Positions 35,004 to 63,948 of a stretch of DNA of 64,000 bases are shown piece by piece. Under the pieces are notes generated by a model. It searched no databases. It saw only the letters and a program-made list of their open reading frames with translations, and was not told the DNA's origin. Position numbers and translations under genes: made by a program. Position 1 is the stretch's first letter; each line of letters opens with the position of its first letter. The stretch covers positions 246,692-310,691 of the IMG/VR virus record IMGVR_UViG_3300042545_001134, one strand, 5' to 3'.

Positions 35004-36815
35004 TTATTGTTCGTTTAGTATATCTTTTAATTTATTTTCTATTTCATAAATATTCTGTTGTGCCCTATTCATATCGAATAAATCGGTAAACTCTTCGCTC
35101 TCACCCAACATTCCTAATATTTTACGTTTTTTTGATGATTCCGCTAACGGTTCGGCTCCACCCGATGGAGGTGCCTCCGCCGCTGGCGCTCCACCACCCA
35201 TATCCATTCCACCTGGTTCTCCACCACCTTCCGGTGCATCACCACCCTGTTCTCTTTCTTCCTCAGGAACACCGTACTTAGTATCTACTTCATCAAATAC
35301 ACCTGAACGTTTAATAACATTCTGAGTGTTTGTTAATTCAAATCCCATTGCTCTTTCAAGACGTTGTTGTTGTAAATCAAGTATAACCTCACTATCACTC
35401 ATACCAAGAATATTTTTCTTAGCCCATGTGTGGGATACTGGTAATATACCAACTTGTGATGTGTCAGACGTTGCATCTTTATATAGAACAATTTTTTCTT
35501 TCCACTGCTCAATACGTAATAAGTCTGATTGTGCTGAAGGGTTAGTTAATGATAATGTGAAATTATCCAACTCATCCTCCAATCCAAGAAGATACAAATG
35601 CATAAGTGCAATTTTGTTTAATTCTTGAATCATAGACTTTTGAATTCTATTGATGGTTCTAGCGAAACGGATATCCATTAACGCTAAAGTTTTACCGTCA
35701 CCAACCACCTCTTCAAAACCTAAGAATGCCTTAGGTATACGAAGTGCCGCCAACATTTTCTTTTGGATGTATTCAATATCCGCAATCTCACCTAAGTTTT
35801 GTGCTCCCGGTAGAGTTTCAATTGGATTAGTTTGTGCCGCATCACGTACAGGAATGAAATAATCTTGGTCAACAGCCATTTGGTTATATCTCATATCCAC
35901 TTGACCATTTCTACTGTCAACTATTTGGTCCCTTTTAAATTTGTTCGCCACACGTTGCACATACGCCTCGATATCTTTATCATCCATGTTACCAACGAAT
36001 ACTTTGAATACACGTCTTTCGGGTGCTCTTGTTGTTCTATAAATTAACATCGCATCTTCGGCAAGAAGTAATTGTTTCCAAATTCTTCTAATCTTATCCA
36101 ACATTGATGTACCATATGGTAACTTTCTATCGTCACCCAGTAATCTAAAGTGGGCAATTTCCCATGCTTGGAATTCTAAATCTTTATTTTTCCATTGGAA
36201 CCTTAATTCTCTCGATGGCATCTTAGAATCATTTTGGTTAGGTGCTTTAGTTGAGCCACCCTCCATTCTTTCAATCTCAATATTCGGTAATTGTTGACAA
36301 CCAACAATACCTTTTTCGGGGTCAATTTTTAAATAAACAAAATCATCACCGTACTTACACACACCACGAGCCCACATTTGTAGGTTAGTGTTCAAATCTA
36401 AACGATTAATGAATAAGTCCTCAAGTATGGTTTTAATTCTTGAAGATTCTGAAAATATAGTAAGAATTTCACCTTTTTCTGATAATGTAGTAGATTCTTC
36501 TGCATAGATGTCTAATGCCGCCGAAATCTCAGGAGTAAACTCCATTGATTCATAATCATAATACGCCGACATTCTATTTGGTTCATAATAAACCGATTGG
36601 TTATATAATGATTGTTCAAGTTTTGTCCACTTGTCAGCAACGTATTGACTCTGTTGAGCCTGTAACATCGCCTTTTCGTATTCTTCCCTACTATTGGTTT
36701 TTAGTATTTCTTCTCTCGAGAAATTAAATGACGGTGAATCCTCGGGTTTTACTTGTCCCGGGAAACCAAACATCTTGGTTAACCTCTGAAATACAGTTAT
36801 GTTATTATCTGCCAT
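35004..36815 (-). CDS. gp20: Portal protein, T4 gp20-like
   Basis: PEISAALDIYAEE, EDAMLIYR..RAPERRVF.V.VGN, DYFIPVR, IETLPGAQNLGEIADIEY. Confidence 0.96.
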   Translation of the reverse strand: MADNNITVFQRLTKMFGFPGQVKPEDSPSFNFSREEILKTNSREEYEKAMLQAQQSQYVADKWTKLEQSLYNQSVYYEPNRMSAYYDYESMEFTPEISAALDIYAEESTTLSEKGEILTIFSESSRIKTILEDLFINRLDLNTNLQMWARGVCKYGDDFVYLKIDPEKGIVGCQQLPNIEIERMEGGSTKAPNQNDSKMPSRELRFQWKNKDLEFQAWEIAHFRLLGDDRKLPYGTSMLDKIRRIWKQLLLAEDAMLIYRTTRAPERRVFKVFVGNMDDKDIEAYVQRVANKFKRDQIVDSRNGQVDMRYNQMAVDQDYFIPVRDAAQTNPIETLPGAQNLGEIADIEYIQKKMLAALRIPKAFLGFEEVVGDGKTLALMDIRFARTINRIQKSMIQELNKIALMHLYLLGLEDELDNFTLSLTNPSAQSDLLRIEQWKEKIVLYKDATSDTSQVGILPVSHTWAKKNILGMSDSEVILDLQQQRLERAMGFELTNTQNVIKRSGVFDEVDTKYGVPEEEREQGGDAPEGGGEPGGMDMGGGAPAAEAPPSGGAEPLAESSKKRKILGMLGESEEFTDLFDMNRAQQNIYEIENKLKDILNEQ

Positions 36816-36872: not shown

Positions 36873-38642
36873 TTACCTCTTTTTGGAAAATAACCACGAA
36901 TATTCTTTATAGTGGTCCTTAGTCGCATTACCGTGTATCTGTTGAACCACATTAGCGTCCGTACCCATTGAACCTATTTGGTCAAATGCGGTACCATATG
37001 AATAAAACGATTTGTTCGGTTCGTAGGTTCTTTCAGTTACCGTCCACGACTCCAACATTGCCTTATTTGCGTTCTCGTTTTTTTCTAATTGACTAAAACA
37101 CATATCGGCCGCGTAAAGTGCCATCGACATACTCATAATTGCATCATCATGATGTCCTTTCATGTGGTCAGGTCTACCGTTGATATAAACAAATGTGTTT
37201 AATTCATTTACTAATCTACTTGACCTAACTTGGAATCCTTTTCTTAATTGTTCTTCAAATGCGGCAACAATCTGAGTTCTTTTATTGTTAAAATTTAATC
37301 CGGGGATTTTTTCCATCGCCTTCGAATTATATTCCCAAATATTCTTTGTATTAACACCATCAATATACAGGTTCCTATAATTCATCTCCTGTAATTTTCT
37401 GGATGTTGCCACACCCATACCACCGGTGATATCAATTACAATAAACGCCTCATATAAAATTCCCCATTTATATGCAACTGACGCTAAATCGTCGGGTGGA
37501 ATCTTACCTATATATTCCGCAACTTGTTCCCTCTCATCAAAGTCAATTATATTAATAGATGAGAAGTCTTCACTGTCCCCTCTACTCACATCGACACCCA
37601 TAATGTATTTATGTCCTTGTACCGGTTCTTTCCATTGCCAAAAGGTACCTTGCATGTACTTTTCTTTTGGTGTGCGTAACATGTTCTTAGTTATATTATC
37701 TTGAATATCACCCGGAATAACACCATCACCCGAACCCAAGAAGTCACACTCTAACTCTTGCGCAATCTTACGTCTATCATATTTGAACTTTTTTGACATT
37801 GATTCAAACCATGAAGAAAACGGTTTATATCCCAATTCTTCAAGTTCGGCATACTTTTCTATGTCAAAGTCATATATTATCACTTCAGTATCGTCATATT
37901 GTTCTCTATTCAACATGTAATGACATATATCCTGACATTTAACCCAACGTAAGTCCTTTGTGTAACGAGGGTCTTTAAACCACCTTAAATCGGTTATATG
38001 GAAGTCATTGATACCTCTCATCGCTTGGTCATAAACACCATAGTAAATTGGGTCATATCCATTCGGAGTAGAAACAAGAATAATCTTACCACCTGTAGAT
38101 AGGGATGCCATAGATGCCGCCCAAAAATCTTCACCGGCTTCGATATATGCCGCCTCGTCAAATACAAGGATTGTTGGGGTATAACCACGTAACGCATCCG
38201 CAGATGTCGCAACCGCCTTAACCTCACACCCGTTGTTTAACCTAAATCTACTTTCTGAATTTTTATCGGGTGAAAACCCAACATTCAACCAATCTGGCCA
38301 TTGGTCTAAGAAATGACGAACCTTATTGGCCATTTCCACCGCGGTATCCTTTTTGTTGGCAATTAATAATACCCTTTCAGGGTTTTCTGGTTTTGCCAAT
38401 TGTAGTCTTCTGGAAATCCATGCGGCAGTTACTGTGGTAACACCGGCCTGTCTATATTTCCTCGTAATATTTTCGTTGTATACTTCGTAATCCTTGATTA
38501 ACTGAACTTGGTCAGGGAATAACTCTAAAGGAACATATTTCTTTTGCGTATTGTCATATGTCGTTAAGTATGTTTTTAACGCATATGGAGCATCCTTCAT
38601 TATACGAGCATACTCTTTTAATTGTTCTATCTTATTACTCAT
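36873..38642 (-). CDS. gp17: Terminase large subunit, T4 gp17-like
   Basis: KYRQAGVTT, LVFDEAAYI, STPNG, QELECDF, GVDVSRG..EDFS, HDDAIM. Confidence 0.96.
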   Translation of the reverse strand: MSNKIEQLKEYARIMKDAPYALKTYLTTYDNTQKKYVPLELFPDQVQLIKDYEVYNENITRKYRQAGVTTVTAAWISRRLQLAKPENPERVLLIANKKDTAVEMANKVRHFLDQWPDWLNVGFSPDKNSESRFRLNNGCEVKAVATSADALRGYTPTILVFDEAAYIEAGEDFWAASMASLSTGGKIILVSTPNGYDPIYYGVYDQAMRGINDFHITDLRWFKDPRYTKDLRWVKCQDICHYMLNREQYDDTEVIIYDFDIEKYAELEELGYKPFSSWFESMSKKFKYDRRKIAQELECDFLGSGDGVIPGDIQDNITKNMLRTPKEKYMQGTFWQWKEPVQGHKYIMGVDVSRGDSEDFSSINIIDFDEREQVAEYIGKIPPDDLASVAYKWGILYEAFIVIDITGGMGVATSRKLQEMNYRNLYIDGVNTKNIWEYNSKAMEKIPGLNFNNKRTQIVAAFEEQLRKGFQVRSSRLVNELNTFVYINGRPDHMKGHHDDAIMSMSMALYAADMCFSQLEKNENANKAMLESWTVTERTYEPNKSFYSYGTAFDQIGSMGTDANVVQQIHGNATKDHYKEYSWLFSKKR

Positions 38643-56836: not shown

Positions 56837-56909
56837 GGGCTGTTGGTATAGTTGGCTAACACACGACATTTGCACTGTCGAATCCCCGGTTCGAAGCCGG
56901 GACGGTCCA
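56837..56909 (+). tRNA. tRNA-Ala(TGC)
   Basis: Cloverleaf, CGACA-TT TGC AC-TGTCG, G3:U70. Confidence 0.93.
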
Positions 56910-56940
56910 CAAAGTGTTCTTTGACATATTGGTTTAATTT

Positions 56941-57013
56941 GGTACCGTAGCTCAGTTGGTAGAGCGTCGCCCTGAAGAGGCGAGCGTCACTGGTTCGAAT
57001 CCGGTCGGTACCA
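56941..57013 (+). tRNA. tRNA-Phe(GAA)
   Basis: TCGCC-CT GAA GA-GGCGA. Confidence 0.93.
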
Positions 57014-57018
57014 CATTT

Positions 57019-57092
57019 GTCTCCGTAGCTCAGTTGGTTAGAGCACCTCACTTTTAATGAGGGAGTCACGCGTTCGAGTCGCGTCGGGGACA
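57019..57092 (+). tRNA. tRNA-Lys(TTT)
   Basis: CCTCA-CT TTT AA-TGAGG. Confidence 0.93.
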
Positions 57093-57094
57093 CA

Positions 57095-57229
57095 AAGGTT
57101 GATTGGGGAATGATTATGTCGATAGTTCGAGAGTGAATACTGACTGACATAATCGGAGTTTGGAGGTGTTCACCTAAGTAATGCCAATCATAAAAGTAGA
57201 TGTCCACTGAACCATCTTCTACTTTCCTT
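57095..57229 (+). ncRNA. Unassigned structured RNA A
   Basis: Helices TGATTGG/CCAATCA, GATTATGTC/GACATAATC, AAAGTAGA/TCTACTTT. Confidence 0.6.
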
Positions 57230-57234
57230 TATTT

Positions 57235-57307
57235 AGTTCCGTAGCTCAGTTGGGAGAGCATCTGCCTTACATGCAGAGGGTCACTGGTTCGAACCCAGTC
57301 GGAACTA
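57235..57307 (+). tRNA. tRNA-Val(TAC)
   Basis: TCTGC-CT TAC AT-GCAGA. Confidence 0.93.
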
Positions 57308-57316
57308 CAAATACAC

Positions 57317-57388
57317 ATGGGTGTGGTGCAATGGTTAGCATAAGAGTCTCCAAAACTTTTGATGGGAGTTCGAGTCTCTCCACCCGTG
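57317..57388 (+). tRNA. tRNA-Trp(CCA)
   Basis: AGAGT-CT CCA AA-ACTTT. Confidence 0.9.
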
Positions 57389-57409
57389 CAAACTTTAAAA
57401 ACAAATAAC

Positions 57410-57838
57410 ATGGAAAGAGATGACAACATCGATGCCGTCAAAATGAGATTTGAGGCGGAGAAAATGAAATTAAGGGAAGAAAGGGAAAAAACAATTAAAC
57501 AGTATTGGGAAAATTTACCAAAACTTAATAATCCTGAAGATGTACCAACACTCCCAAGAGTTGATGAAAAACAATGGAGGGAGTTTTATGTCCCAAAATT
57601 AATCGAAGCGGGAGCAATCCCAAAAAATGATTTAATTCATGGTCAAATTTATATTGGTGAACATAGAAACACAACCATCGCAAGATGGAATCAAGAAACA
57701 GATAAATTTGTACACATGAGATATAAGTTTGGTTGGAGAGAAGATGAATGTAATCACTTTGAGGATGATAATGGATTTGCGTTGTTTGTACCAATTAGAT
57801 TGGGTACACAAGAAGAATGGGATGAAAGAATTAAATAA
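57410..57838 (+). CDS. Hypothetical protein within the tRNA array
   Basis: Start re-assigned to ATG 57410 because the track start lies inside tRNA-Trp. Confidence 0.75.
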   Translation: MERDDNIDAVKMRFEAEKMKLREEREKTIKQYWENLPKLNNPEDVPTLPRVDEKQWREFYVPKLIEAGAIPKNDLIHGQIYIGEHRNTTIARWNQETDKFVHMRYKFGWREDECNHFEDDNGFALFVPIRLGTQEEWDERIK

Positions 57839-57845
57839 TTAAGTT

Positions 57846-57919
57846 ACTCTCGTAGTTCAATGGATTAGAACATTTCACTACGGATGAAAGGGTTGGGAGT
57901 TCGAGTCTCTCCGAGAGTA
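57846..57919 (+). tRNA. tRNA-Arg(ACG)
   Basis: TTTCA-CT ACG GA-TGAAA. Confidence 0.92.
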
Positions 57920-57925
57920 CGATAA

Positions 57926-57995
57926 GGTCAGTTTGGTCGTGGAGGCCGGTTAGTCTGCAAAATTAACGGAGTTGGTTCGATTCCAACATTGACCT
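57926..57995 (+). tRNA. tRNA-Cys(GCA)
   Basis: TTAGT-CT GCA AA-ATTAA, U73, short D-loop. Confidence 0.85.
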
Positions 57996-58001
57996 CAATA
58001 T

Positions 58002-58079
58002 GGTGGATATAGTTCAGTTGGTTAGAACGTCTGATTGTGGTTCAGAAGGTCGCCGGTTCGAATCCGGTTATTCACCCCA
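58002..58079 (+). tRNA. tRNA-His(GTG) with G-1 and encoded CCA
   Basis: TCTGA-TT GTG GT-TCAGA; G-1:C73. Confidence 0.93.
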
Positions 58080-58082
58080 TAT

Positions 58083-58156
58083 TGGAATATAACTCAGTTG
58101 GTTAGAGTGTCATCCTGATACGGTGAAAGTCGGTGGTTCGAGTCCACCTATTCCAA
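58083..58156 (+). tRNA. tRNA-Ile(GAT)
   Basis: TCATC-CT GAT AC-GGTGA. Confidence 0.92.
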
Positions 58157-58163
58157 CAAACAT

Positions 58164-58237
58164 TGCGGGGTGGTCTGGAGAGGTTCCAGCTCGGTCTCAT
58201 AAGCCGAATCACGTGGGTTCGATTCCCACTCCCGCAA
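58164..58237 (+). tRNA. tRNA-Met(CAT)
   Basis: TCGGT-CT CAT AA-GCCGA; initiator-like acceptor TGCGGGG; atypical D arm. Confidence 0.85.
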
Positions 58238-58301
58238 CTTTTTAAAAACATTTTGAAGTGTGACTTTTATTATGTATATTTGAAATGTTCTTTGATTTAA
58301 T

Positions 58302-58378
58302 GCCTCCTTAGCTCAGTTGGCCGGAGCGCCTCACTTGTAATGAGGATGTCGGCGGTTCGAATCCGTCAGGAGGCTCCA
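58302..58378 (+). tRNA. tRNA-Thr(TGT) with encoded CCA
   Basis: CCTCA-CT TGT AA-TGAGG. Confidence 0.93.
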
Positions 58379-58380
58379 TT

Positions 58381-58453
58381 GGTCCCGTGGTTGAATGGTT
58401 ACAATTCCACCCTGTCACGGTGCGAGGTACGGGTTCGAATCCCGTCGGGACCG
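58381..58453 (+). tRNA. tRNA-Asp(GTC)
   Basis: CACC-CT GTC AC-GGTG, G73. Confidence 0.92.
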
Positions 58454-58455
58454 CG

Positions 58456-58660
58456 TTGAGTAAGAGATACTCACTAAGTTTGGTAACGTTCTTTCAAGAT
58501 GTTATAGTTGTCGCCTTCCACAACTTTAAAGAGGAGGTCGTCGGAGTATGGTCGTAACAAAACCACCGAGTATGTTTGACGTTTATGTGCGGGTAAGACC
58601 GTCTCGTGTTTTCAATACGAAAACAGAAGAAAAATCTACTCATTGGAATCTCAGGTGGGA
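58456..58660 (+). ncRNA. Unassigned structured RNA B
   Basis: Hairpins TGAGTA/TACTCA, TAACGTT/GATGTTA, AGTTGT/ACAACT, TGTTTTC/GAAAACA; GC-richer than flanks; no ORF. Confidence 0.5.
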
Positions 58661-58665
58661 AAATT

Positions 58666-58751
58666 GGAAGGATGGCAGAGTTGGTCTATCGCATCGGTCT
58701 TGAAAACCGAAGTACTGAAAGGTACCGTGGGTTCGAATCCTACTCCTTCCG
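58666..58751 (+). tRNA. tRNA-Ser(TGA)
   Basis: TCGGT-CT TGA AA-ACCGA, long variable arm. Confidence 0.93.
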
Positions 58752-58797
58752 CAAACGATTGTTGTTCTTTGACAAATTAAAAACAAAATTAAAAGAT

Positions 58798-59088
58798 ATG
58801 GATACATTATCATTTATTTTAGGAATGTCCTCGGTGGTGGTTATCGCAATTGCGGTAGTTGCTGTTAAAGGATTTTTTAAGGTCAGAAATGTTGAGAAAC
58901 ACTTCAATGAATACAAACAAAACTTTACAGTTGAGTTTGATAATAGAACAAAAGATATTCATGATAGTATGAATCGTGTGAATGATGAATTACATCGTAG
59001 AATTGATAACACAGAAAGAGAAGTCTTTTCCCAATTAGACTCTCGATTAGATAAATTGGAAACTAAGTTAACGAGCCGTAAGGCATAA
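58798..59088 (+). CDS. Single-TM coiled-coil protein
   Basis: Start re-assigned to ATG 58798 (MDTLSFILG...). Confidence 0.75.
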   Translation: MDTLSFILGMSSVVVIAIAVVAVKGFFKVRNVEKHFNEYKQNFTVEFDNRTKDIHDSMNRVNDELHRRIDNTEREVFSQLDSRLDKLETKLTSRKA

Positions 59089-59122
59089 TAAATAAATCGT
59101 TAAAGACAACAATCGTTTATAT

Positions 59123-59194
59123 GGCCCTTTCGACTATCGGTTAGGTCGTCAGGTTTTCATCCTGAAAAGTCGGGTTCGATTCCCGGAGGGGCTA
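59123..59194 (+). tRNA. tRNA-Glu(TTC)
   Basis: TCAGG-TT TTC AT-CCTGA. Confidence 0.92.
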
Positions 59195-59217
59195 CAATGG
59201 AATTAAATTAAACCAAT

Positions 59218-59457
59218 ATGTTAGAAAGAATATTAGGAATTTACGAAGATGAAGGATTACTTATCGCTGATGGATTCGATGATGCAGTAATTGGAATTGA
59301 TGAATCGTCAATGAGAGTAATCTATTCGGTTGCCAAATGTCTCCACATTTTAGAACGTGATATGGAGATGATTGATGCGATTGAATACTTTGAATTTAAC
59401 GTAAAAGGCGCATACGTTGGAGACAAGACTCCGATATGGTGTGAAGATTTTTTTTAA
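59218..59457 (+). CDS. Conserved phage hypothetical protein
   Basis: ADGFDDAVIG...EYFEFNV.GAYVG..TP motif seen in many phages. Confidence 0.8.
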   Translation: MLERILGIYEDEGLLIADGFDDAVIGIDESSMRVIYSVAKCLHILERDMEMIDAIEYFEFNVKGAYVGDKTPIWCEDFF

Positions 59458-59459
59458 TT

Positions 59460-59669
59460 ATGATTAATTATTTAGGTTACTTCGCAACATTCTTAACTCT
59501 ACTTTCTTTTTCTTTTAAAAATATTACAAAATTAAGAATTGTTAGTTCAACGTCATGTGTGTTTTGGATTGTTTATGGGTGTTTAAAAAATGATTATCCA
59601 ATCATCAGCACAAATGTTTTAATAATCATAATACATGTGTACTACCTACTAAAAACAAAAAATAAATAA
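59460..59669 (+). CDS. YgjV/PQ-loop-like small membrane protein
   Basis: LGY.AT...L.SF......KLR......FWIVYG.....P.I.TN. Confidence 0.7.
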   Translation: MINYLGYFATFLTLLSFSFKNITKLRIVSSTSCVFWIVYGCLKNDYPIISTNVLIIIIHVYYLLKTKNK

Positions 59670-59676
59670 ACTTTTG

Positions 59677-59695
59677 TATATTTGTATATACTTAT
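59677..59695 (+). promoter_or_regulatory. Promoter elements for tRNA array 2 (TATATTTG and TACTTAT)
   Basis: TAnnTTTG at 59677-59684, TAYTTAT at 59689-59695. Confidence 0.6.
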
Positions 59696-59702
59696 TAAAA
59701 CA

Positions 59703-59801
59703 ATGATGAACTTGGATAACATACAACAACTGTCTAACAACCCGATAAGTGGTAATGGGAGAGGTACGTATTTATGTCACCCAAGTTCGGAATCCAAATG
59801 A
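59703..59801 (+). CDS. Putative attenuator leader peptide 2 (32 aa, MMNLDNIQQLSNNPISGNGRGTYLCHPSSESK)
   Basis: Same layout as leader 1; GTTCGG (59785-59790) is complementary to CCGAAC in the terminator 5' arm. Confidence 0.65.
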   Translation: MMNLDNIQQLSNNPISGNGRGTYLCHPSSESK

Positions 59802-59830
59802 ATGTAAGAATTTTAAACTCTATACTCACG

Positions 59831-59872
59831 AGACCCGAACATCCCAAAAAGATTTTCGGGTTTTTTGTTTTT
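59831..59872 (+). terminator. Intrinsic terminator/attenuator upstream of tRNA array 2
   Basis: ACCCGAA-C-ATC-loop-GAT-T-TTCGGGT plus U tract. Confidence 0.82.
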
Positions 59873-59929
59873 AGAGATATTCTTTTGTATATTTGTGATG
59901 TAGTTCTTTGACATGTTGGTGAAAAAAAT

Positions 59930-60014
59930 GCTGAGGTGATGGAATGGTAGACATGACAGACTTAAAATCTGTTGAGTAGTAATGCTCGTGTGGGTTCGAC
60001 TCCCATCCTCAGTA
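59930..60014 (+). tRNA. tRNA-Leu(TAA)
   Basis: ACAGA-CT TAA AA-TCTGT, long variable arm. Confidence 0.93.
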
Positions 60015-60015
60015 C

Positions 60016-60218
60016 AAAAAACAATACCTTACATAAGACGGATTAGCACCGTTGAAAGGAACCTTGGCTTCAATCGGAGTAATTACCGTAACCGAAGTAA
60101 TAATGACCCAAGGTACTATGTGATGGACCCTGCTCTATGGTGCACTCATAACAGGTGAACAGTAAACTATGTTCAATCAAATTCAAAACCACGGTGAGCG
60201 TGGAAGGTATTGTTTTTT
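60016..60218 (+). ncRNA. Unassigned structured RNA C (multibranch, ~200 nt)
   Basis: Perfect 15-bp closing helix AAAAAACAATACCTT/AAGGTATTGTTTTTT enclosing five helices. Confidence 0.7.
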
Positions 60219-60225
60219 ATTTAAC

Positions 60226-60300
60226 GCACCCGTAGCTCAGCTGGATTAGAGCAACTGCCTTCTAAGCAGTAGGTCACAGGTTCGAATCCTGTCGGGTGTA
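60226..60300 (+). tRNA. tRNA-Arg(TCT)
   Basis: ACTGC-CT TCT AA-GCAGT. Confidence 0.93.
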
Positions 60301-60341
60301 CAAATGGAGTCCTTTACTTTATCCTTTTATATTCATATAAT

Positions 60342-60986
60342 ATGGAAAAAAGTATGAGATATAAAAAAAAATTAAACAGTGAGTGTAAATGGTGTGGGGA
60401 AACCTTTAATGTAGAAGATAAACCAAAAGGTTTCATGGCAAATCATAGTAGATGGTGTGTAAAAAACCCAAATAAAAATGATTACATGAAAACTCTATCA
60501 AAAAATAGAAAATCAATTACCGAAGAATCCAGAAAATTGGCAGGAAAATCGATATCGAAAGCATGGGAAAACGGTTCGTATTCTCATGTTAAGTTTAATA
60601 GCTTCCAAGGAAGAACACACACCGAAGAAGCGAAAGAAAAAATAAGAAGAGCACAACTATTATTAAATTACCGAAGACTTAGAAAACATCAAGTAATGTA
60701 TAAAGATGTGTTATTAGATAGTAGTTGGGAATTAGCGTTAGCAATCCGTTTAGATGAATTAAACATAAAATGGATACGACCTGAACGCATTATGTGGATT
60801 GATAAAAATAATTTAAAACGTTCATATTATCCTGATTTTTATTTAAACGATTATGATATGTATTTGGACCCAAAAAATCCAGCGGCATATCAAAATCAAA
60901 TTGAAAAAATTGAAATTTTAAAAAACACAATTCCAAATTTAAAGTTCATTTTAAGTTTGAAAGAATGTAAGGAGTTTAACATATAG
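60342..60986 (+). CDS. Free-standing homing-endonuclease-like protein (Zn finger, NUMOD3, PD-(D/E)xK)
   Basis: CKWC...H..WC; GRTHTEEAKEKIR; DSSWE...YYPDFYL......DPK. Confidence 0.8.
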   Translation: MEKSMRYKKKLNSECKWCGETFNVEDKPKGFMANHSRWCVKNPNKNDYMKTLSKNRKSITEESRKLAGKSISKAWENGSYSHVKFNSFQGRTHTEEAKEKIRRAQLLLNYRRLRKHQVMYKDVLLDSSWELALAIRLDELNIKWIRPERIMWIDKNNLKRSYYPDFYLNDYDMYLDPKNPAAYQNQIEKIEILKNTIPNLKFILSLKECKEFNI

Positions 60987-61058
60987 GGAATTAGCGTAGT
61001 TCGGTATCGCGCTTGGTTTGGGACCAAGAGGTCGTCAGTTCGAATCTGGCATTCCCTA
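60985..61058 (+). tRNA. tRNA-Pro(TGG)
   Basis: CTTGG-TT TGG GA-CCAAG. Confidence 0.92.
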
Positions 61059-61063
61059 CAAAT

Positions 61064-61137
61064 TCCTCGATAGCTCAGTCGGTTAGAGCATTTGACTGTT
61101 AATCAAAGGGTCCCAAGTTCGAGTCTTGGTCGGGGAG
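61064..61137 (+). tRNA. tRNA-Asn(GTT)
   Basis: TTTGA-CT GTT AA-TCAAA. Confidence 0.93.
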
Positions 61138-61146
61138 CAAATAAAT

Positions 61147-61220
61147 ACCTTCGTAGGAGAACTGGTATATCCACTGCACTTAGGATGCAGATTTTGTGGG
61201 TTCGAATCCCACCGAAGGTA
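61147..61220 (+). tRNA. tRNA with TAG (Leu) anticodon and short variable loop
   Basis: CTGCA-CT TAG GA-TGCAG; 5-nt variable loop; A73. Confidence 0.85.
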
Positions 61221-61225
61221 CAAAT

Positions 61226-61353
61226 AGTCAGGTGGCGGAAAGATTACGGCGCTGGGATAAAAACTGGGGCCTTGATAATCGTGGTAGACGCCCTGTTTCT
61301 AGACGATGGCCGAAAGCAAGATTTCGGTACAGGTTCAAATCCTGTCCTGACTA
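61226..61353 (+). ncRNA. tRNA-like RNA with D-loop insertion and irregular anticodon arm
   Basis: Acceptor AGTCAGG/CCTGACT, T arm ACAGG-TTCAAAT-CCTGT, split GCGGAA...TGGTAGACGC D arm. Confidence 0.75.
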
Positions 61354-61363
61354 CAAACATTAT

Positions 61364-61445
61364 TGGAAGGTGGGTGAGTGGTTAAAACCGACAGACTGTA
61401 AATCTGTTCCCATTGGGTACGGGGGTTCAAATCCCTCCCTTCCAA
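61364..61445 (+). tRNA. tRNA-Tyr(GTA)
   Basis: ACAGA-CT GTA AA-TCTGT, long variable arm. Confidence 0.93.
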
Positions 61446-61461
61446 CTTAAAAATTATTATT

Positions 61462-62037
61462 ATGGCAAGAAGTAAAATTTTATCTGACTTATTAAAATCC
61501 ATAACTCCTGAAATGGAAGAAAAGTGGAAACAGGAAAGAATGAATTATAAAAAAAGTTTAAGTATCGAATATCAATTGGGGTATTATGTTGGGTTGGAAA
61601 TTGTACATCGTTACTTACCAACACTATCAACTGATATGATTCAATCGAATTATGTAATTGAGGTATCTCAGATGGATTCTGAGGAGAACAAACGATTAGA
61701 AGTGGAATGGTTCACAACCACCAAACACGGTGGAGAATGGGATGGTAAAAGTGATAACGGTAATAAAGAAAGATGGGATGATTTATTTGACCACAATAAA
61801 ATGTTGGAGGTAAAATATCTACCACATACTTTAACATGTCACATGGATGTTTTGAACATCAACGACATGAAACAATTTAAAGAGGGAATAAGAACAAGTC
61901 TATGGGATTGTGATATGTGTTCATATAATATCGATATCGAAAACATAAAAATTTATGACGATGAGGATATTAGATTTACAATTATTGAATTCACATTGGA
62001 TTCATTAAATGATACTAAAACAGATGAAGAGATTTAA
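61462..62037 (+). CDS. Hypothetical protein
   Basis: 191 aa ORF. Confidence 0.7.
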   Translation: MARSKILSDLLKSITPEMEEKWKQERMNYKKSLSIEYQLGYYVGLEIVHRYLPTLSTDMIQSNYVIEVSQMDSEENKRLEVEWFTTTKHGGEWDGKSDNGNKERWDDLFDHNKMLEVKYLPHTLTCHMDVLNINDMKQFKEGIRTSLWDCDMCSYNIDIENIKIYDDEDIRFTIIEFTLDSLNDTKTDEEI

Positions 62038-62713
62038 GATTATATCAGTAGTGGTGGTAACACTAACAATTTTATTTGCGTCACTCATGTTAATTTCAAG
62101 TCAATCCTTGAAAAGTGTGAAGGTAAAAAAAGATGTGGTTAAATCACCGTCTTTAAATGTGGATACGGTTGTTGATGTGAATGGTAAACATGTTTTGTTT
62201 ATTGGTGATTCTCACACCGCAAATCATGACTTTGGTTGGCAAGTTATTCTGTGTCAGAAAACGGGGATGAAAATGAATAACACCGCAGTTATAGGTAAAC
62301 ACTTACCATGGATGGTATCTGTCGCAAGACAAACAATTTCACCCTATTATGATTATTGTTTTATCTACGGTGGTGCAAATGATATCCATGGAAATCGAAA
62401 TCCATATTCTGTTGTTAAAGACGTTCAGAAGATTGTTGAGATGTGCACAATGAATGGGGTTGAGGCAATTGTTCTTACAGGGTTTAATGCAGAAGAATGT
62501 GTTAGACCGTTAAAAGGACAAGAATTTTATCCAAAGGCGTACACTCGTTATCAAAAAATATTGATGGATAGTATCGTAGATGCAACTGTTGTTGATACAA
62601 GAGTGGTGGTGAGAACGGATTGCGGTGATTGGACTTGTCACATGCACCCAACGGGACATAGAAAAGTGGCAAACGCAGTTATTAAACAAATGAACTTTAA
62701 AACAAAAAACTGA
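62024..62713 (+). CDS. SGNH/GDSL hydrolase with N-terminal membrane anchor
   Basis: FIGDSHT, GGAND, D..CH...GH. Confidence 0.85.
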   Translation: MKRFKIISVVVVTLTILFASLMLISSQSLKSVKVKKDVVKSPSLNVDTVVDVNGKHVLFIGDSHTANHDFGWQVILCQKTGMKMNNTAVIGKHLPWMVSVARQTISPYYDYCFIYGGANDIHGNRNPYSVVKDVQKIVEMCTMNGVEAIVLTGFNAEECVRPLKGQEFYPKAYTRYQKILMDSIVDATVVDTRVVVRTDCGDWTCHMHPTGHRKVANAVIKQMNFKTKN

Positions 62714-63318
62714 TGACAAAATATACCTTAGTAATCGGTGGTTGGGAGTTGAACGCTTCCGGTCATCAACTCACAAACGAAGAAGTTGTAAAACTTAGAA
62801 ACCACATGTCTGAAAATGGTATCGATGATTTAAGTTCAATGGGATTTGACATTGAAGAAGTTTTAAATTATGATATATTCGATGCGAATATGTGGGTGAT
62901 GGATAAACCTCTTTGGAATGGTACACCACACTTCATGGTATTCAAATCGGATGACATGGAAAATAGAGTTCTTGAATTCGAAGAAAAAGAAATGTCTGAC
63001 CATTATGAAGTAGATGAAGATGCAGATTACGGTGACACATTTAACGGATTTCCAATTGAAGGTGAGGAGGAAAATATCATCCTTTGGTTAGAAGAAAATA
63101 AAGGATGGGTATGTGACTTTGAATTTGAGTCTGATGAAATTCCAACTGCAAAAGATTTCAGTATGGTTGGTGGTTGTATTGAAACACCTAACGGAGATTG
63201 GGACTTTATTGATAAAATGTACTTCAAGGGTAAAGAACTTCAGATGGACTTTAACCACCAAGAAACTCGAGGTAAGGCATTAACAATAGAACTTTGGACA
63301 TTAGAAAACACCAAATAA
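62713..63318 (+). CDS. Acidic hypothetical protein
   Basis: 201 aa ORF. Confidence 0.7.
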   Translation: MTKYTLVIGGWELNASGHQLTNEEVVKLRNHMSENGIDDLSSMGFDIEEVLNYDIFDANMWVMDKPLWNGTPHFMVFKSDDMENRVLEFEEKEMSDHYEVDEDADYGDTFNGFPIEGEEENIILWLEENKGWVCDFEFESDEIPTAKDFSMVGGCIETPNGDWDFIDKMYFKGKELQMDFNHQETRGKALTIELWTLENTK

Positions 63319-63319
63319 A

Positions 63320-63535
63320 ATGAACGAAAATTTAGATAACAACTTAAAATCAATTATTGCTGAAAAAATTGAAAACTCCGGATTTTATAAACTTCAAGGA
63401 GTAGCCCCTGACGGATTCAAATTATTACCAATTGAGGTAATCGAAGATTTGAAAGAATTTGAAAATTGGAAAGAGTTCAAACACAACGAACAATGGCTTG
63501 ACGCTCAGTCAAAAATCTATATGAAAGACAAATAA
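63320..63535 (+). CDS. Hypothetical protein
   Basis: 71 aa ORF. Confidence 0.65.
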   Translation: MNENLDNNLKSIIAEKIENSGFYKLQGVAPDGFKLLPIEVIEDLKEFENWKEFKHNEQWLDAQSKIYMKDK

Positions 63536-63598
63536 TTAAAAATATTTGTTTATTTAAAAAAATGATTGTATCTTTGTATTACTAAAAGAAATAAAGAT

Positions 63599-63856
63599 AT
63601 GCCAAAATTTAGCACCTACGTAGATGTTGATATCCATGAATTTATGGGAGAATGTAGCAAAAGAGAAATTAAAGAACTTATTGATTATTTGGTTCAAGAT
63701 GGACACATTAATTCAAGTTCAATCATCGTCCCAAGTAAGAAAAACTCATTGATGGAAATTGAACACATCGAAACATGTAATAAATTATCATCAGTTTATC
63801 TTAGAATGAATCGTGAAGACTGGGAGTTAATAAAACAAATCGCATCGAAATATTAA
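63599..63856 (+). CDS. Hypothetical protein
   Basis: ATG 63599 downstream of TATCTTTG (63569-63576). Confidence 0.65.
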   Translation: MPKFSTYVDVDIHEFMGECSKREIKELIDYLVQDGHINSSSIIVPSKKNSLMEIEHIETCNKLSSVYLRMNREDWELIKQIASKY

Positions 63857-63868
63857 TCATAATTAAAT

Positions 63869-63940
63869 TGGGCATTAGCTCAGCGGTAGAGCTCTCGACT
63901 GTTAATCGAGTGGTCCTAGGTTCAAATCCTAGATGCCCAG
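63869..63940 (+). tRNA. tRNA-Asn(GTT), second divergent copy
   Basis: CTCGA-CT GTT AA-TCGAG, G73. Confidence 0.92.
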
Positions 63941-63948
63941 CAATATAT

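What the first reader, a model, noticed from the sequence alone, without database searches (positions are those of the whole stretch)
60016..60218. Unassigned ~200-nt multibranch RNA between tRNA-Leu and tRNA-Arg
Seen: a 15-bp perfect closing helix enclosing ACGG/CCGT, ACCTTGG/CCAAGGT (with nested GCTTC/GAAGT and CGG/CCG), CCTG/CAGG, TGAACA/TGTTCA and CCACG/CGTGG. There is a possible pseudoknot or alternative pairing GCACCGT/ATGGTGC. I see no tmRNA, RNase P or SRP signature. Processing of the flanking tRNAs would release it.
Basis: seen in the sequence. Interest (0 to 1): 0.65.

Follow-up and report, generated by a model that had tools for sequence, protein, structure and literature searches.

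The report
Phage tRNA-island RNA with self-pairing loops
The ~205-base stretch between two phage tRNA genes is a real, conserved structured RNA: its core is the Rfam motif "freshwater-1" (function unknown), the motif is only a third of the whole molecule, and two fast-changing loops that always stay self-complementary suggest that copies of the RNA pair with each other.

Summary
The RNA is not "unassigned", though: 60119-60181 matches Rfam RF02979 (freshwater-1) at 73.4 bits, above the family cut-off of 72.

That 62-nt model is a fragment of a ~205-nt RNA. I collected 138 distinct homologues from viral and metagenome contigs. All are conserved end to end, and 42 of 51 base pairs show compensatory changes (95% paired against 78% in shuffles).

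In 141 of 169 loci the RNA starts flush with the 3' end of a same-strand tRNA, and often another tRNA follows. No protein gene is a conserved neighbour. The carriers are uncultured phages; this window's phage has a gp23-like capsid.

The new point is that two loop tips stay self-complementary while they change fast. The P5a apex is GUGCAC, UGGCCA, GUCGAC, UGUACA, AUGCAU or GUGCGCAC. The P4b loop is UAAUUA, UAGCUA or UGGCCA. There were at least 10 and at least 8 independent switches. Published work on GOLLD and OLE reads this pattern as symmetric kissing loops between copies.

My best reading is a stable RNA cut out of the tRNA precursor that forms homodimers or oligomers. Its biological role is unknown.

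The parts
59930..60015 (+). tRNA-Leu(UAA). Its 3' end defines the 5' end of the RNA.
   Evidence: ARAGORN; Rfam tRNA 56.4 bits. The same flush arrangement is seen in 141 of 169 homologous loci, with varying tRNA identity.
60015..60222 (+). The full-length structured RNA (extended freshwater-1). There is one copy in the window.
   Evidence: Covariance model R1, built from 139 sequences: 218.1 bits, E 1e-68, model positions 1-206, the only hit in 64 kb.
60016..60030 (+). P1, 5' strand of the closing helix. It pairs with 60204-60218.
   Evidence: Perfect 15 bp in the sequence. All 10 inner pairs covary, with AU, UA, CG and GC all seen.
60031..60035 (+). P2, 5' strand (ACAUA). It pairs with 60117-60121 (UAUGU) and closes the 5' domain.
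Evidence: Covariation: GC 67 / UA 31, and AU 87 / GU 7 / UA 5.
60037..60053 (+). P3 hairpin: 5-bp stem and a conserved 7-nt loop, AUUAGCA.
   Evidence: 4 of 5 pairs are compensatory and 99% of cells pair. The loop is very conserved, with 0.19x the mean difference density.
60054..60060 (+). J3/4, the conserved junction GAAAGGA. G60059 pairs with C60116.
   Evidence: Nearly invariant columns. The extra pair covaries, GC 59 / AU 27.
60061..60114 (+). P4 arm: P4 (60061-67 with 60108-14), P4a (60068-71 with 60094-97), P4b (60075-77 with 60086-88).
   Evidence: All 7 P4 pairs are compensatory and 99% of cells pair. A metatranscriptome contig carries the compensatory change C60075G with G60088C.
60078..60085 (+). 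L4b, the 8-nt loop AGUAAUUA. It holds the 6-nt palindrome UAAUUA (60080-85; GUAAUUAC 60079-86). Candidate symmetric kissing loop.
   Evidence: Variants are UAAUUA, UAGCUA and UGGCCA. Self-pair test: 88% against 73.6% in shuffles, central pair GC 65 / AU 33. At least 8 independent AAUU-AGCU switches. Fast-evolving, 2.1x.
60119..60181 (+). Stretch matched by Rfam RF02979, freshwater-1.
   Evidence: 73.4 bits against a gathering score of 72, E 4e-15, model positions 1-62 of 62.
60122..60128 (+). J2/5, GAUGGAC: an almost invariant unpaired junction.
   Evidence: Nearly invariant columns; 0.15x difference density. Part of this conservation was imposed by my search pattern.
60129..60155 (+). P5 (60129-32 with 60152-55) enclosing the P5a hairpin (60137-49).
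   Evidence: P5 is invariant. The P5a pairs covary, GC 53 / AU 39 and UA 49 / CG 16.
60140..60145 (+). Apex of P5a, GUGCAC: a UGCA tetraloop plus its closing G-C pair, forming a palindrome. Candidate symmetric kissing or duplex dimerisation site.
   Evidence: 137 of 138 distinct homologues have a perfect palindrome of 6 nt or more here. The types are GUGCAC, UGGCCA, GUGCGCAC, GUCGAC, UGUACA and AUGCAU; the one exception, UGCG, self-pairs with wobbles. At least 10 independent UGCA-GGCC switches.
60156..60175 (+). P6 hairpin: 6 bp and a conserved 8-nt loop, GUAAACUA.
   Evidence: All 6 pairs are compensatory. The loop is conserved, 0.13x.
60176..60188 (+). J6/7, an A-rich single strand containing AAAU(U/C)C.
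   Evidence: Conserved columns.
60189..60203 (+). P7 hairpin CCACG-GUGAG-CGUGG, directly abutting the 3' strand of P1.
   Evidence: All 5 pairs are compensatory (CG/GC/UA and others). Absent in subfamily B.
60204..60218 (+). P1, 3' strand.
   Evidence: See the P1 5' strand entry.
60219..60225 (+). 7-nt spacer AUUUAAC, which is also the 5' leader of tRNA-Arg. RNase P cleavage after 60225 would set the RNA's 3' end (inferred).
   Evidence: Sequence. A downstream tRNA follows in 78 of 169 loci, 47-73 nt after the core anchor.
60226..60301 (+). tRNA-Arg(UCU).
   Evidence: ARAGORN; Rfam tRNA 71.9 bits.

Best explanation
This is a phage gene for a stable, non-coding RNA of about 205 nt: the full-length form of the Rfam 'freshwater-1' motif.

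Shown: it is conserved end to end in uncultured phages. It folds on the + strand into a long closing helix (P1), a 5' domain (P2 enclosing the P3 hairpin and the branched P4 arm) and a 3' domain (P5/P5a, P6, P7).

Inferred: it is transcribed within a tRNA precursor. Its 5' end comes from 3' maturation of the upstream tRNA. Its 3' end comes from RNase P cutting the downstream tRNA, or from the end of the transcript where no tRNA follows. P1 then locks both ends into a helix.

Inferred from the pattern of sequence change: the tips of two arms (L5a and, in most members, L4b) carry self-complementary sequences. Through these, two or more copies of the RNA pair with each other by symmetric loop-loop (kissing) contacts or extended duplexes, giving homodimers or larger RNA-only assemblies.

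These two tips change fast between alternative palindromes while the other loops stay fixed. That suggests they set partner specificity (inference).

The cellular role of the assembly is not known. The nearest analogues, GOLLD and ROOL, are also phage RNAs found near tRNA islands, and their role is unknown too.
For: Family and structure:
- The Rfam hit is above the gathering score.
- There are 138 distinct homologues, all conserved over about 205 nt.
- Covariation: 92-95% paired against 76-78% in shuffles and 33-44% when slid; 42-43 pairs are compensatory; 0 of 500 shuffles reach the observed values.
- Strand: an almost invariant G.U pair in P3 (97 of 99) and many other G.U pairs would be A.C mismatches on the other strand.

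Context:
- A same-strand tRNA ends flush with P1 in 141 of 169 loci, and its identity varies across 12 anticodon types. A tRNA follows closely in 78 of 169.
- No protein family is found in more than 14% of loci.
- Only 2 hits in 185,579 species genomes, both MAG contigs and both next to a tRNA.

Expression:
- Contigs from two metatranscriptome studies cover 59945-60246 and bridge both tRNA junctions. None lies on the neighbouring ORF at 60313-60918.

Self-pairing:
- The P5a apex is a perfect palindrome in 137 of 138 sequences, in six different versions.
- L4b holds a 6-nt palindrome in about 100 of 138, in three versions.
- On supported branches of a tree built without those columns, there are at least 10 and at least 8 independent palindrome-to-palindrome switches.
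- Among close relatives, differences concentrate in L4b (2.1x) and P5a (1.9x), while L3, L6 and the junctions are 5-8 times below average.
- L030 and L090 are 99.4% identical outside these loops, yet carry GAUGUGCACGUC and GUGUGGCCACAC.
- Kretsch et al. (bioRxiv 10.1101/2024.12.08.627333) showed by cryo-EM that this kind of palindrome covariation marks intermolecular symmetric kissing loops in OLE and GOLLD. They argue that adjacent nucleotides cannot pair within one chain.
- Predicted gain on dimerising the P5 domain is -14.7 kcal/mol, against -2 to -6 for control hairpins.
Against: - No experiment shows dimers. Everything about self-association is inferred from sequence.
- L5a is only a tetraloop, which is geometrically poor for a classic kissing complex. 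It would need the closing pairs to open, or an extended duplex.
- About 38 of 138 members carry a non-palindromic L4b (RUCGCAA, self-pairing only with two C.A mismatches).
- One natural copy (L061) lacks the whole 5' domain including L4b.
- The tree rests on about 190 columns and recombination is likely, so the switch counts are approximate.
- The expression evidence comes from assembled contigs that are 88-99% alike. These may come from related phages or from carried-over DNA, and the flanking ORF may be missed simply because it is less conserved.
- RNA ends were not observed.
- GGACCCUGCUCU and AACAGG were fixed by my search patterns, so their invariance is partly circular.
Confidence: 0.6

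Rival explanations
1. It is a stable phage RNA cut from the tRNA precursor that works as a monomer, by binding a host or phage protein or the ribosome. In this reading the palindromic tips are recognition sites for a symmetric (dimeric) RNA-binding protein, or have no role in RNA-RNA contact.
For: The junctions and the L3 and L6 loops are extremely conserved and unpaired, as expected for a protein- or ligand-binding core. T4 RNAC and RNAD occupy the same position and have no known multimeric behaviour. According to the text quoted, GOLLD bound ribosomes in pull-down assays.
Against: A sequence-specific protein would not tolerate six different apex palindromes (GUGCAC, UGGCCA, GUCGAC, UGUACA, AUGCAU, GUGCGCAC). 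What is conserved is complementarity, not sequence. No conserved protein gene lies nearby.
Confidence: 0.2
2. It is a small ribozyme or ligand-binding RNA. The conserved multi-helix junction (GAAAGG, GAUGGAC, CUCU, AA) would be a catalytic or binding pocket, for instance one that processes the RNA out of the tRNA transcript.
For: Invariant unpaired nucleotides are concentrated at junctions. The RNA is structured, lies in a transcript that must be cut, and has no protein partner nearby.
Against: No Rfam ribozyme or riboswitch family matches, even at E-values up to 10; the only such hit is an 18.5-bit RAGATH-1 hit that lies outside the element. The tRNA enzymes already explain both ends. There is no downstream gene under its control: the next gene is usually a tRNA. 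This reading does not explain the palindromic loops.
Confidence: 0.08
3. It acts at the DNA level. The palindromes would be protein-binding or cleavage sites, for instance for a homing or restriction-type nuclease or a recombination site in the tRNA island, and the 'RNA structure' would be incidental.
For: The apex hexamers are perfect DNA palindromes. Homing-endonuclease-type ORFs sit in phage tRNA clusters, such as T4 segB, and there is an uncharacterised ORF at 60342-60986.
Against: G.U pairs are tolerated only on the + strand, including an almost invariant one. 42 of 51 helix pairs covary over the whole 205 nt, which a DNA site would not need. The palindrome sequence itself is not conserved. 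RNA-library contigs cover the element.
Confidence: 0.04
4. It encodes a small protein: the ORF at 59982-60158, 58 aa.
For: An ATG-started ORF overlaps the region.
Against: The ORF starts inside tRNA-Leu. Homologues differ by indels that are not multiples of three, and by paired compensatory changes. Conservation continues well past the ORF's stop.
Confidence: 0.01

Closest known systems
Rfam RF02979, freshwater-1 RNA motif (which I recall as one of the 224 candidate RNAs of Weinberg et al. 2017, PMC5737381; function unknown)
   Same: Window 60119-60181 matches the whole 62-nt model above the curated cut-off. It has the same two hairpins (P5/P5a and P6) and the same conserved 5' stretch, UGUGAUGGAC. 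It also shares the habitat: freshwater and estuary metagenomes with no cultured carrier.
   Different: The model describes 62 nt; the conserved RNA is about 205 nt. The motif's 'unpaired' 5' end (UGU) is in fact the 3' strand of helix P2. A 5' domain (P3, the P4 arm), P7 and the closing helix P1 are not in the model. Three things are absent from the Rfam model and from any text I could search: the tRNA-flush position, the palindromic loops and the phage origin. The original supplement was not available, so I cannot exclude that some of this was noted there.
GOLLD and ROOL RNAs (and OLE): large 'ornate' RNAs that form RNA-only multimers (Kretsch et al., bioRxiv 10.1101/2024.12.08.627333)
   Same: GOLLD and ROOL are phage or prophage RNAs of unknown function, often next to tRNA islands. 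Their quaternary contacts include symmetric kissing loops. [quoted passage not shown] The same signature is seen here in two loops.
   Different: There is no sequence or structure homology: no Rfam hit to GOLLD, ROOL or OLE. This RNA is 3-4 times smaller (about 205 nt against roughly 580-800 or more). Multimerisation here is predicted, not observed.
Phage T4 RNAC and RNAD (species 1 and 2 RNAs)
   Same: They are small stable RNAs of unknown function, encoded in the tRNA cluster of a T4-type phage. They sit directly 3' of a tRNA: rnaD starts 1 nt after the end of tRNA-Arg (PMC3014915; PMC9697503). The window's phage has a gp23-like capsid protein.
   Different: They are not homologous: model R1 finds nothing at rnaC or rnaD with filters off. 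They are shorter (139 and 119 nt). In the sequence I read a tRNA-like T-arm in RNAC (CCGGGUUCGAAUCCCGG), which this RNA lacks.
HIV-1 dimerisation initiation site (my own recollection, not tested here)
   Same: A hairpin loop displaying a 6-nt palindrome (GUGCAC or GCGCGC in HIV-1) that drives a symmetric kissing dimer, which can mature into an extended duplex. Alternative palindromes define compatibility groups. L4b (an 8-nt loop with UAAUUA, UAGCUA or UGGCCA) has this layout, and the P5a apex even reads GUGCAC.
   Different: It is an unrelated molecule in an unrelated biological setting. P5a has only a 4-nt loop.

Membership tests
Rfam RF02979 freshwater-1 | Covariance-model score at or above the curated gathering score of 72 bits | tested here: met
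   73.4 bits, E 4.3e-15, model positions 1-62 of 62, at 60119-60181 on the + strand. It passes by only 1.4 bits.
Rfam RF02979 freshwater-1 | Two adjacent hairpins preceded by the conserved UGUGAUGGAC, with CCUG/CAGG and the internal CUCU | tested here: met
   The alignment to the model consensus. The same elements are invariant or covarying in 138 homologues.
Rfam RF02979 freshwater-1 | Occurrence in aquatic or freshwater metagenomes, not in classified organisms (my recollection of the family description) | tested here: met
   Homologues occur in IMG/VR and JGI/ENA metagenome contigs. None of 50,697 deposited phage records carries it. Only 2 MAG contigs among 185,579 species genomes do.
GOLLD / ROOL / OLE (RNA-only multimers) | Match to the family covariance model | tested here: not met
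   No hit at the gathering threshold over the window, nor at E-values up to 10 over 59700-60400. It is not a member, only a functional analogue.
GOLLD / ROOL / OLE (RNA-only multimers) | Phage-borne, near tRNA islands (GOLLD and ROOL) | tested here: met
   The window has 21 tRNAs plus capsid, portal and terminase genes. 141 of 169 loci are flush with a tRNA.
GOLLD / ROOL / OLE (RNA-only multimers) | Covariation between alternative palindromes in a loop, the signature of a symmetric intermolecular kissing loop | tested here: met
   The criterion is as stated.
GOLLD / ROOL / OLE (RNA-only multimers) | Homo-oligomer observed physically (cryo-EM or biophysics) | not testable with these tools
   This needs in-vitro RNA work. 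There is only a thermodynamic hint: a dimer gain of -14.7 kcal/mol for the P5 domain.
T4 RNAC / RNAD | Small stable RNA gene directly 3' of a tRNA in a T4-type tRNA cluster | tested here: met
   T4 annotation compared with window.
T4 RNAC / RNAD | Sequence or structure homology | tested here: not met
   R1 run with filters off on T4 69500-73500: nothing at rnaC or rnaD above noise. The best hit is 8.9 bits, elsewhere in the stretch.
tmRNA, RNase P RNA, SRP RNA, 6S, Y RNA, known ribozymes and riboswitches | Match to any of the 4227 Rfam models | tested here: not met
   Apart from freshwater-1 and the tRNAs, only sub-threshold chance-level hits. ARAGORN finds no tmRNA.

The most novel reading that the evidence does not exclude
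A natural RNA of only about 205 nt, made by uncultured T4-like phages from their tRNA transcripts, assembles without protein into symmetric dimers or closed rings or cages. It does so through two independent self-recognition loops. These loops switch rapidly between orthogonal palindromes, so that the RNAs of related co-infecting phages do not cross-assemble, acting as a 'self/non-self barcode' on a small relative-in-kind of GOLLD and ROOL.
Probability: 0.3. Interest if true: 0.8.

Novelty: new variant of a known kind. Interest (0 to 1): 0.55.

Why it matters
Freshwater-1 is in Rfam as a 62-nt candidate small RNA, and no function or carrier was named in anything I could search. Three things change here.

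First, the motif is the core of a ~205-nt, two-domain RNA. Second, it belongs to phages and sits flush against tRNA genes, as T4's still-unexplained RNAC and RNAD do. Third, it carries the sequence signature that was recently shown, for the much larger GOLLD and OLE RNAs, to mark RNA-RNA assembly.

If the prediction holds, this would be a small, easily made model for natural RNA-only quaternary structure, with built-in, naturally varied specificity loops. It would also add a third, unrelated RNA class to the pattern of structured RNAs in phage tRNA islands that multimerise. That would sharpen an open question: what these RNAs do during infection.

If the prediction fails, the result is still a corrected and much enlarged model of an existing Rfam family.

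Tried and rejected
I counted it on the model-aligned set. Pairing equals the shuffled level and there is no compensatory signal. Rejected as unsupported.
- **All-against-all column covariation scan for pseudoknots.** It recovered the nested helices plus one extra nested pair (G60059-C60116) and possible alternative pairing of U60030 with G60122. It found no tertiary helix. The invariant junctions cannot be tested this way.
- **Pairing of L4b or L5a with the P3 loop, or with each other.** There is no consistent complementarity across loop types.
- **A conserved protein partner.** I clustered 1,847 ORFs from 134 distinct loci. The commonest family is present in at most 19 of them.
- **Homology to T4 rnaC or rnaD.** None.
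- **A cultured phage carrying the element.** blastn against 50,697 phage records hit only the flanking tRNAs.
- **A bacterial host from genomes.** There are 51 pattern hits, but only 2 are real, and both are MAG contigs that may be mis-binned phage DNA. The Chitinophagaceae bin and the Flavobacterium-phage-like capsid are at best a weak hint of a Bacteroidota host.
- **Literature.** 'freshwater-1' occurs in no searchable full text, and the supplement of PMC5737381 is not held.
- **Promoter and terminator scan of 59100-61100.** Nothing above chance on the + strand.
- **The small-ORF reading.** Rejected (see rival explanations).
- **Second copies.** None in the window, and one copy per locus in 99 loci.

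Full report
**1. What is there**

The window region 59930-60301 reads tRNA-Leu(UAA) at 59930-60015, then a 210-nt spacer, then tRNA-Arg(UCU) at 60226-60301. It lies inside an array of 21 same-strand tRNA genes at 56837-63941.

The spacer begins with AAAAAACAATACCTT (60016-60030) and ends with its perfect complement AAGGTATTGTTTTTT (60204-60218). The minimum-free-energy fold of the + strand reproduces them at -57.5 kcal/mol, z = -3.8; the - strand gives z = -3.0.

The window belongs to a tailed phage. It has a major head protein (29809-31539), a portal (35004-36815) and a large terminase (36873-38642). The capsid is gp23-like, 30-40% identical to the capsids of Flavobacterium, Microcystis and Rhodothermus T4-type phages.

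**2. It is not unassigned**

A scan of all 4227 Rfam families places RF02979, 'freshwater-1 RNA', on 60119-60181. The score is 73.4 bits against a gathering score of 72, E 4e-15, and the whole 62-nt model is matched. Nothing else beyond the tRNAs reaches threshold, and ARAGORN sees no tmRNA.

The model covers less than a third of the element, however. It also annotates its first ten positions (UGUGAUGGAC) as unpaired.

**3. The family is much larger than the Rfam motif**

I ran exact-pattern scans on viral contigs, metagenome contigs and genomes. One of them used a pattern taken only from the 5' half, which the Rfam model does not cover. Together they gave 186 loci and 138 distinct full-length sequences.

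Conservation runs over the whole ~205 nt. I built a covariance model from these sequences (R1; 206 positions, 51 pairs). It finds one copy in the window, 60015-60222, at 218 bits. It finds one copy in each of 99 representative loci, at 138-223 bits.

**4. Structure, in window coordinates**

| Element | Coordinates | Notes |
|---|---|---|
| P1 | 60016-30 with 60204-18 | closing helix |
| P2 | 60031-35 with 60117-21 | new; its 3' strand is the 'unpaired' start of the Rfam motif |
| P3 | 60037-41 with 60049-53 | loop AUUAGCA |
| J3/4 | GAAAGG | G60059 pairs with C60116 |
| P4 | 60061-67 with 60108-14 | |
| P4a | 60068-71 with 60094-97 | |
| P4b | 60075-77 with 60086-88 | loop AGUAAUUA (L4b) |
| junction | GAUGGAC | |
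| P5 | 60129-32 with 60152-55 | |
| P5a | 60137-40 with 60145-49 | loop UGCA (L5a) |
| P6 | 60156-61 with 60170-75 | |
| junction | A-rich | |
| P7 | 60189-93 with 60199-203 | abuts the P1 3' strand |

- On the MAFFT alignment, which was not fitted to any structure, 92.0% of cells pair. The figures are 76.5% in column shuffles and 34-44% when partners are slid by 1-3 columns. 43 of 53 pairs have compensatory changes, and 0 of 500 shuffles reach any of the five measures.
- On the model-fitted alignment the figures are 95.3% against 78.0%, with 42 of 51 pairs compensatory.
- P2 covaries: G-C 67 against U-A 31, and A-U 87 / G.U 7 / U-A 5.
- Only P5 never varies, and part of that was imposed by my search pattern.
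- An almost invariant G.U pair in P3, and many other G.U pairs, fix the + strand as the RNA strand.
An all-against-all covariation scan found no tertiary helix.

**5. Context**

- In 141 of 169 loci with enough upstream sequence, a same-strand tRNA ends 102-114 nt before the core anchor, which is flush with the start of P1.
- The identity of that tRNA varies: Leu-UAA 56, Gly-UCC 31, Tyr 14, Phe 13, Glu 9 and seven others.
- In 78 of 169 loci another tRNA starts 47-73 nt after the anchor, just past P1. Some carriers have only that one tRNA nearby.
- No protein family recurs near the element; the commonest is in 19 of 134 distinct loci.
- No deposited phage genome carries it.
- Among 185,579 species-representative genomes only two MAG contigs do, each next to a tRNA.

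The arrangement mirrors phage T4. There rnaD starts one nucleotide after tRNA-Arg, and rnaC follows it. Both are 'small stable RNAs' whose roles remain unknown (PMC3014915; PMC9697503). R1 detects no homology to them.

**6. Expression**

Contigs from two independent metatranscriptome studies (freshwater 2017, estuary 2025) lie on 59945-60246. Several bridge the tRNA-Leu/element and element/tRNA-Arg junctions. None lies on the neighbouring ORF at 60313-60918 or on 59505-59605. One contig carries the compensatory change C60075G with G60088C in P4b.

This is consistent with co-transcription and accumulation, but it is weak evidence. The contigs are 88-99% alike and may come from related phages, DNA carry-over is not excluded, and no RNA ends can be read from contigs.

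**7. The self-complementary loops**

*P5a apex.* In 137 of 138 distinct sequences it contains a perfect palindrome of 6 nt or more, centred on the loop. The versions are GUGCAC (most), UGGCCA, GUGCGCAC, GUCGAC, UGUACA and AUGCAU. The single exception, UGCG, still self-pairs with two wobbles.

*L4b.* In about 100 of 138 it is an 8-nt loop ending in UAAUUA, UAGCUA or (once) UGGCCA. The rest carry RUCGCAA, which self-pairs only with two C.A mismatches. The central L4b pair reads G-C in 65 sequences and A-U in 33, with one exception.

*Independent switches.* I built a tree without these columns. On its supported branches there are at least 10 independent UGCA-GGCC switches (14 on all branches) and at least 8 independent AAUU-AGCU switches (15 on all branches).

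*Rate of change.* Among relatives at least 92% identical, differences are enriched in L4b (2.1x), the P5a hairpin (1.9x) and P1 (2.7x). L3, L6 and the GAUGGAC junction are 5-8 times below average. L030 and L090 are 99.4% identical elsewhere, yet carry GAUGUGCACGUC and GUGUGGCCACAC.

*Interpretation.* Complementarity between adjacent loop nucleotides cannot be satisfied within one chain. Kretsch et al. use exactly this argument, confirmed by cryo-EM, for symmetric intermolecular kissing loops in OLE and GOLLD. GOLLD and ROOL are also phage RNAs near tRNA islands. A cofold estimate gives the P5 domain an unusually large gain on dimerisation: -14.7 kcal/mol, against -2 to -6 for the other hairpins.

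**8. Interpretation and confidence**

| Claim | Confidence | Basis |
|---|---|---|
| A real structured RNA gene, the full-length form of freshwater-1, carried by phages | about 0.95 | shown |
| Released from the tRNA precursor by tRNA-processing enzymes, with P1 sequestering both ends | about 0.7 | inferred from position and bridging contigs |
| Self-association through L5a, and usually L4b, into dimers or higher assemblies, with the loops acting as fast-changing specificity determinants | about 0.55-0.6 | inferred from sequence evolution and analogy |

The biological role is unknown. The main weaknesses are:
- the tetraloop geometry of L5a;
- the non-palindromic L4b class;
- a natural mini-variant lacking the 5' domain (L061);
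- the approximate tree;
- the lack of any physical measurement.

**9. Novelty**

The locus belongs to a known Rfam family, so it is not a new class. Relative to the 62-nt Rfam model and the texts I could search, the following are new:
- the threefold larger architecture;
- the P2 helix, which absorbs the motif's 'unpaired' end;
- the tRNA-flush phage context;
- the two palindromic, rapidly switching loops that predict RNA-only self-assembly.

I could not read the original supplement, so some overlap with what its authors noted cannot be excluded.

Noticed in passing
window 59834-59872: Just upstream of tRNA-Leu there is a terminator-like hairpin: CCCGAA (59834-39) pairs with TTCGGG (59855-60) around a 15-nt loop, followed by TTTTTTGTTTTT. 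The automatic scan missed it because the loop exceeds its limit. Weak sub-threshold Rfam hits (RAGATH-1 hammerhead 18.5 bits, RybB 13.4 bits) overlap it. If it works as a terminator, tRNA-Leu, the RNA and tRNA-Arg might form a separate transcription unit, but no promoter-like site was found between it and 59930.
   Followed up: partly
window 60342-60986 (+): A 214-aa ORF sits between tRNA-Arg and tRNA-Pro. It has no Pfam match and only weak PHROG hits: phrog_22215 (unknown function) and phrog_9019 ('Holliday junction resolvase', 1.7e-7). Its position inside a tRNA cluster recalls the homing endonuclease segB in the T4 tRNA cluster.
   Followed up: partly
window 56837-63941: There are 21 tRNA genes on one strand, covering 18 amino acids (Gly and Gln are absent), with duplicate Arg, Leu and Asn. 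They are interrupted by small ORFs without family matches. ORF 62009-62713 has a sub-threshold GDSL-lipase match (29.3 bits against a cut-off of 32.9), and ORF 59460-59669 a short MtN3/SWEET-like match.
   Followed up: partly
L061:7908-8034 (-): A natural 127-nt 'mini' copy. P1 and the first pairs of P2 are kept, the whole 83-nt 5' domain (P3 and the P4 arm with L4b) is replaced by 4 nt, and P5-P7 are intact (123 bits). This suggests that the 3' domain (the Rfam core plus P7 and P1) can stand alone.
   Followed up: partly
L179:2349-2620 (+): One copy carries a 68-nt insertion inside loop L4b. It looks like a partial tandem duplication of the J3/4-P4-L4b segment. The rest of the RNA is intact (195 bits).
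   Followed up: no
L025, L050, L076, L096, L109, L116, L119, L133, L138, L139, L171, L196, L197, L206, L234, L303 (element region of each): These form a subfamily. It has UGUU(U/C)AGGACCC instead of UGUGAUGGACCC, reads (A/G)ACAG instead of UUACAG at the P1/P2 boundary, and has no P7 hairpin. P1, P2-P6 and the palindromic apex are retained.
   Followed up: partly
L037 (IMGVR_UViG_3300042545_001134, 310,691 bp), L019, L068, L082: These contigs carry an element identical to the window's, between the same two tRNAs. The window may therefore come from a phage genome of roughly 310 kb (jumbo size).
   Followed up: no
NC_015287 / GU071098 Synechococcus phage S-SSM7, 216582-216726: The most similar tRNA-Leu and tRNA-Arg pair in a cultured phage lies directly adjacent: 145 nt in all, with no intervening RNA. 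So the element is an insertion or loss relative to that arrangement.
   Followed up: no
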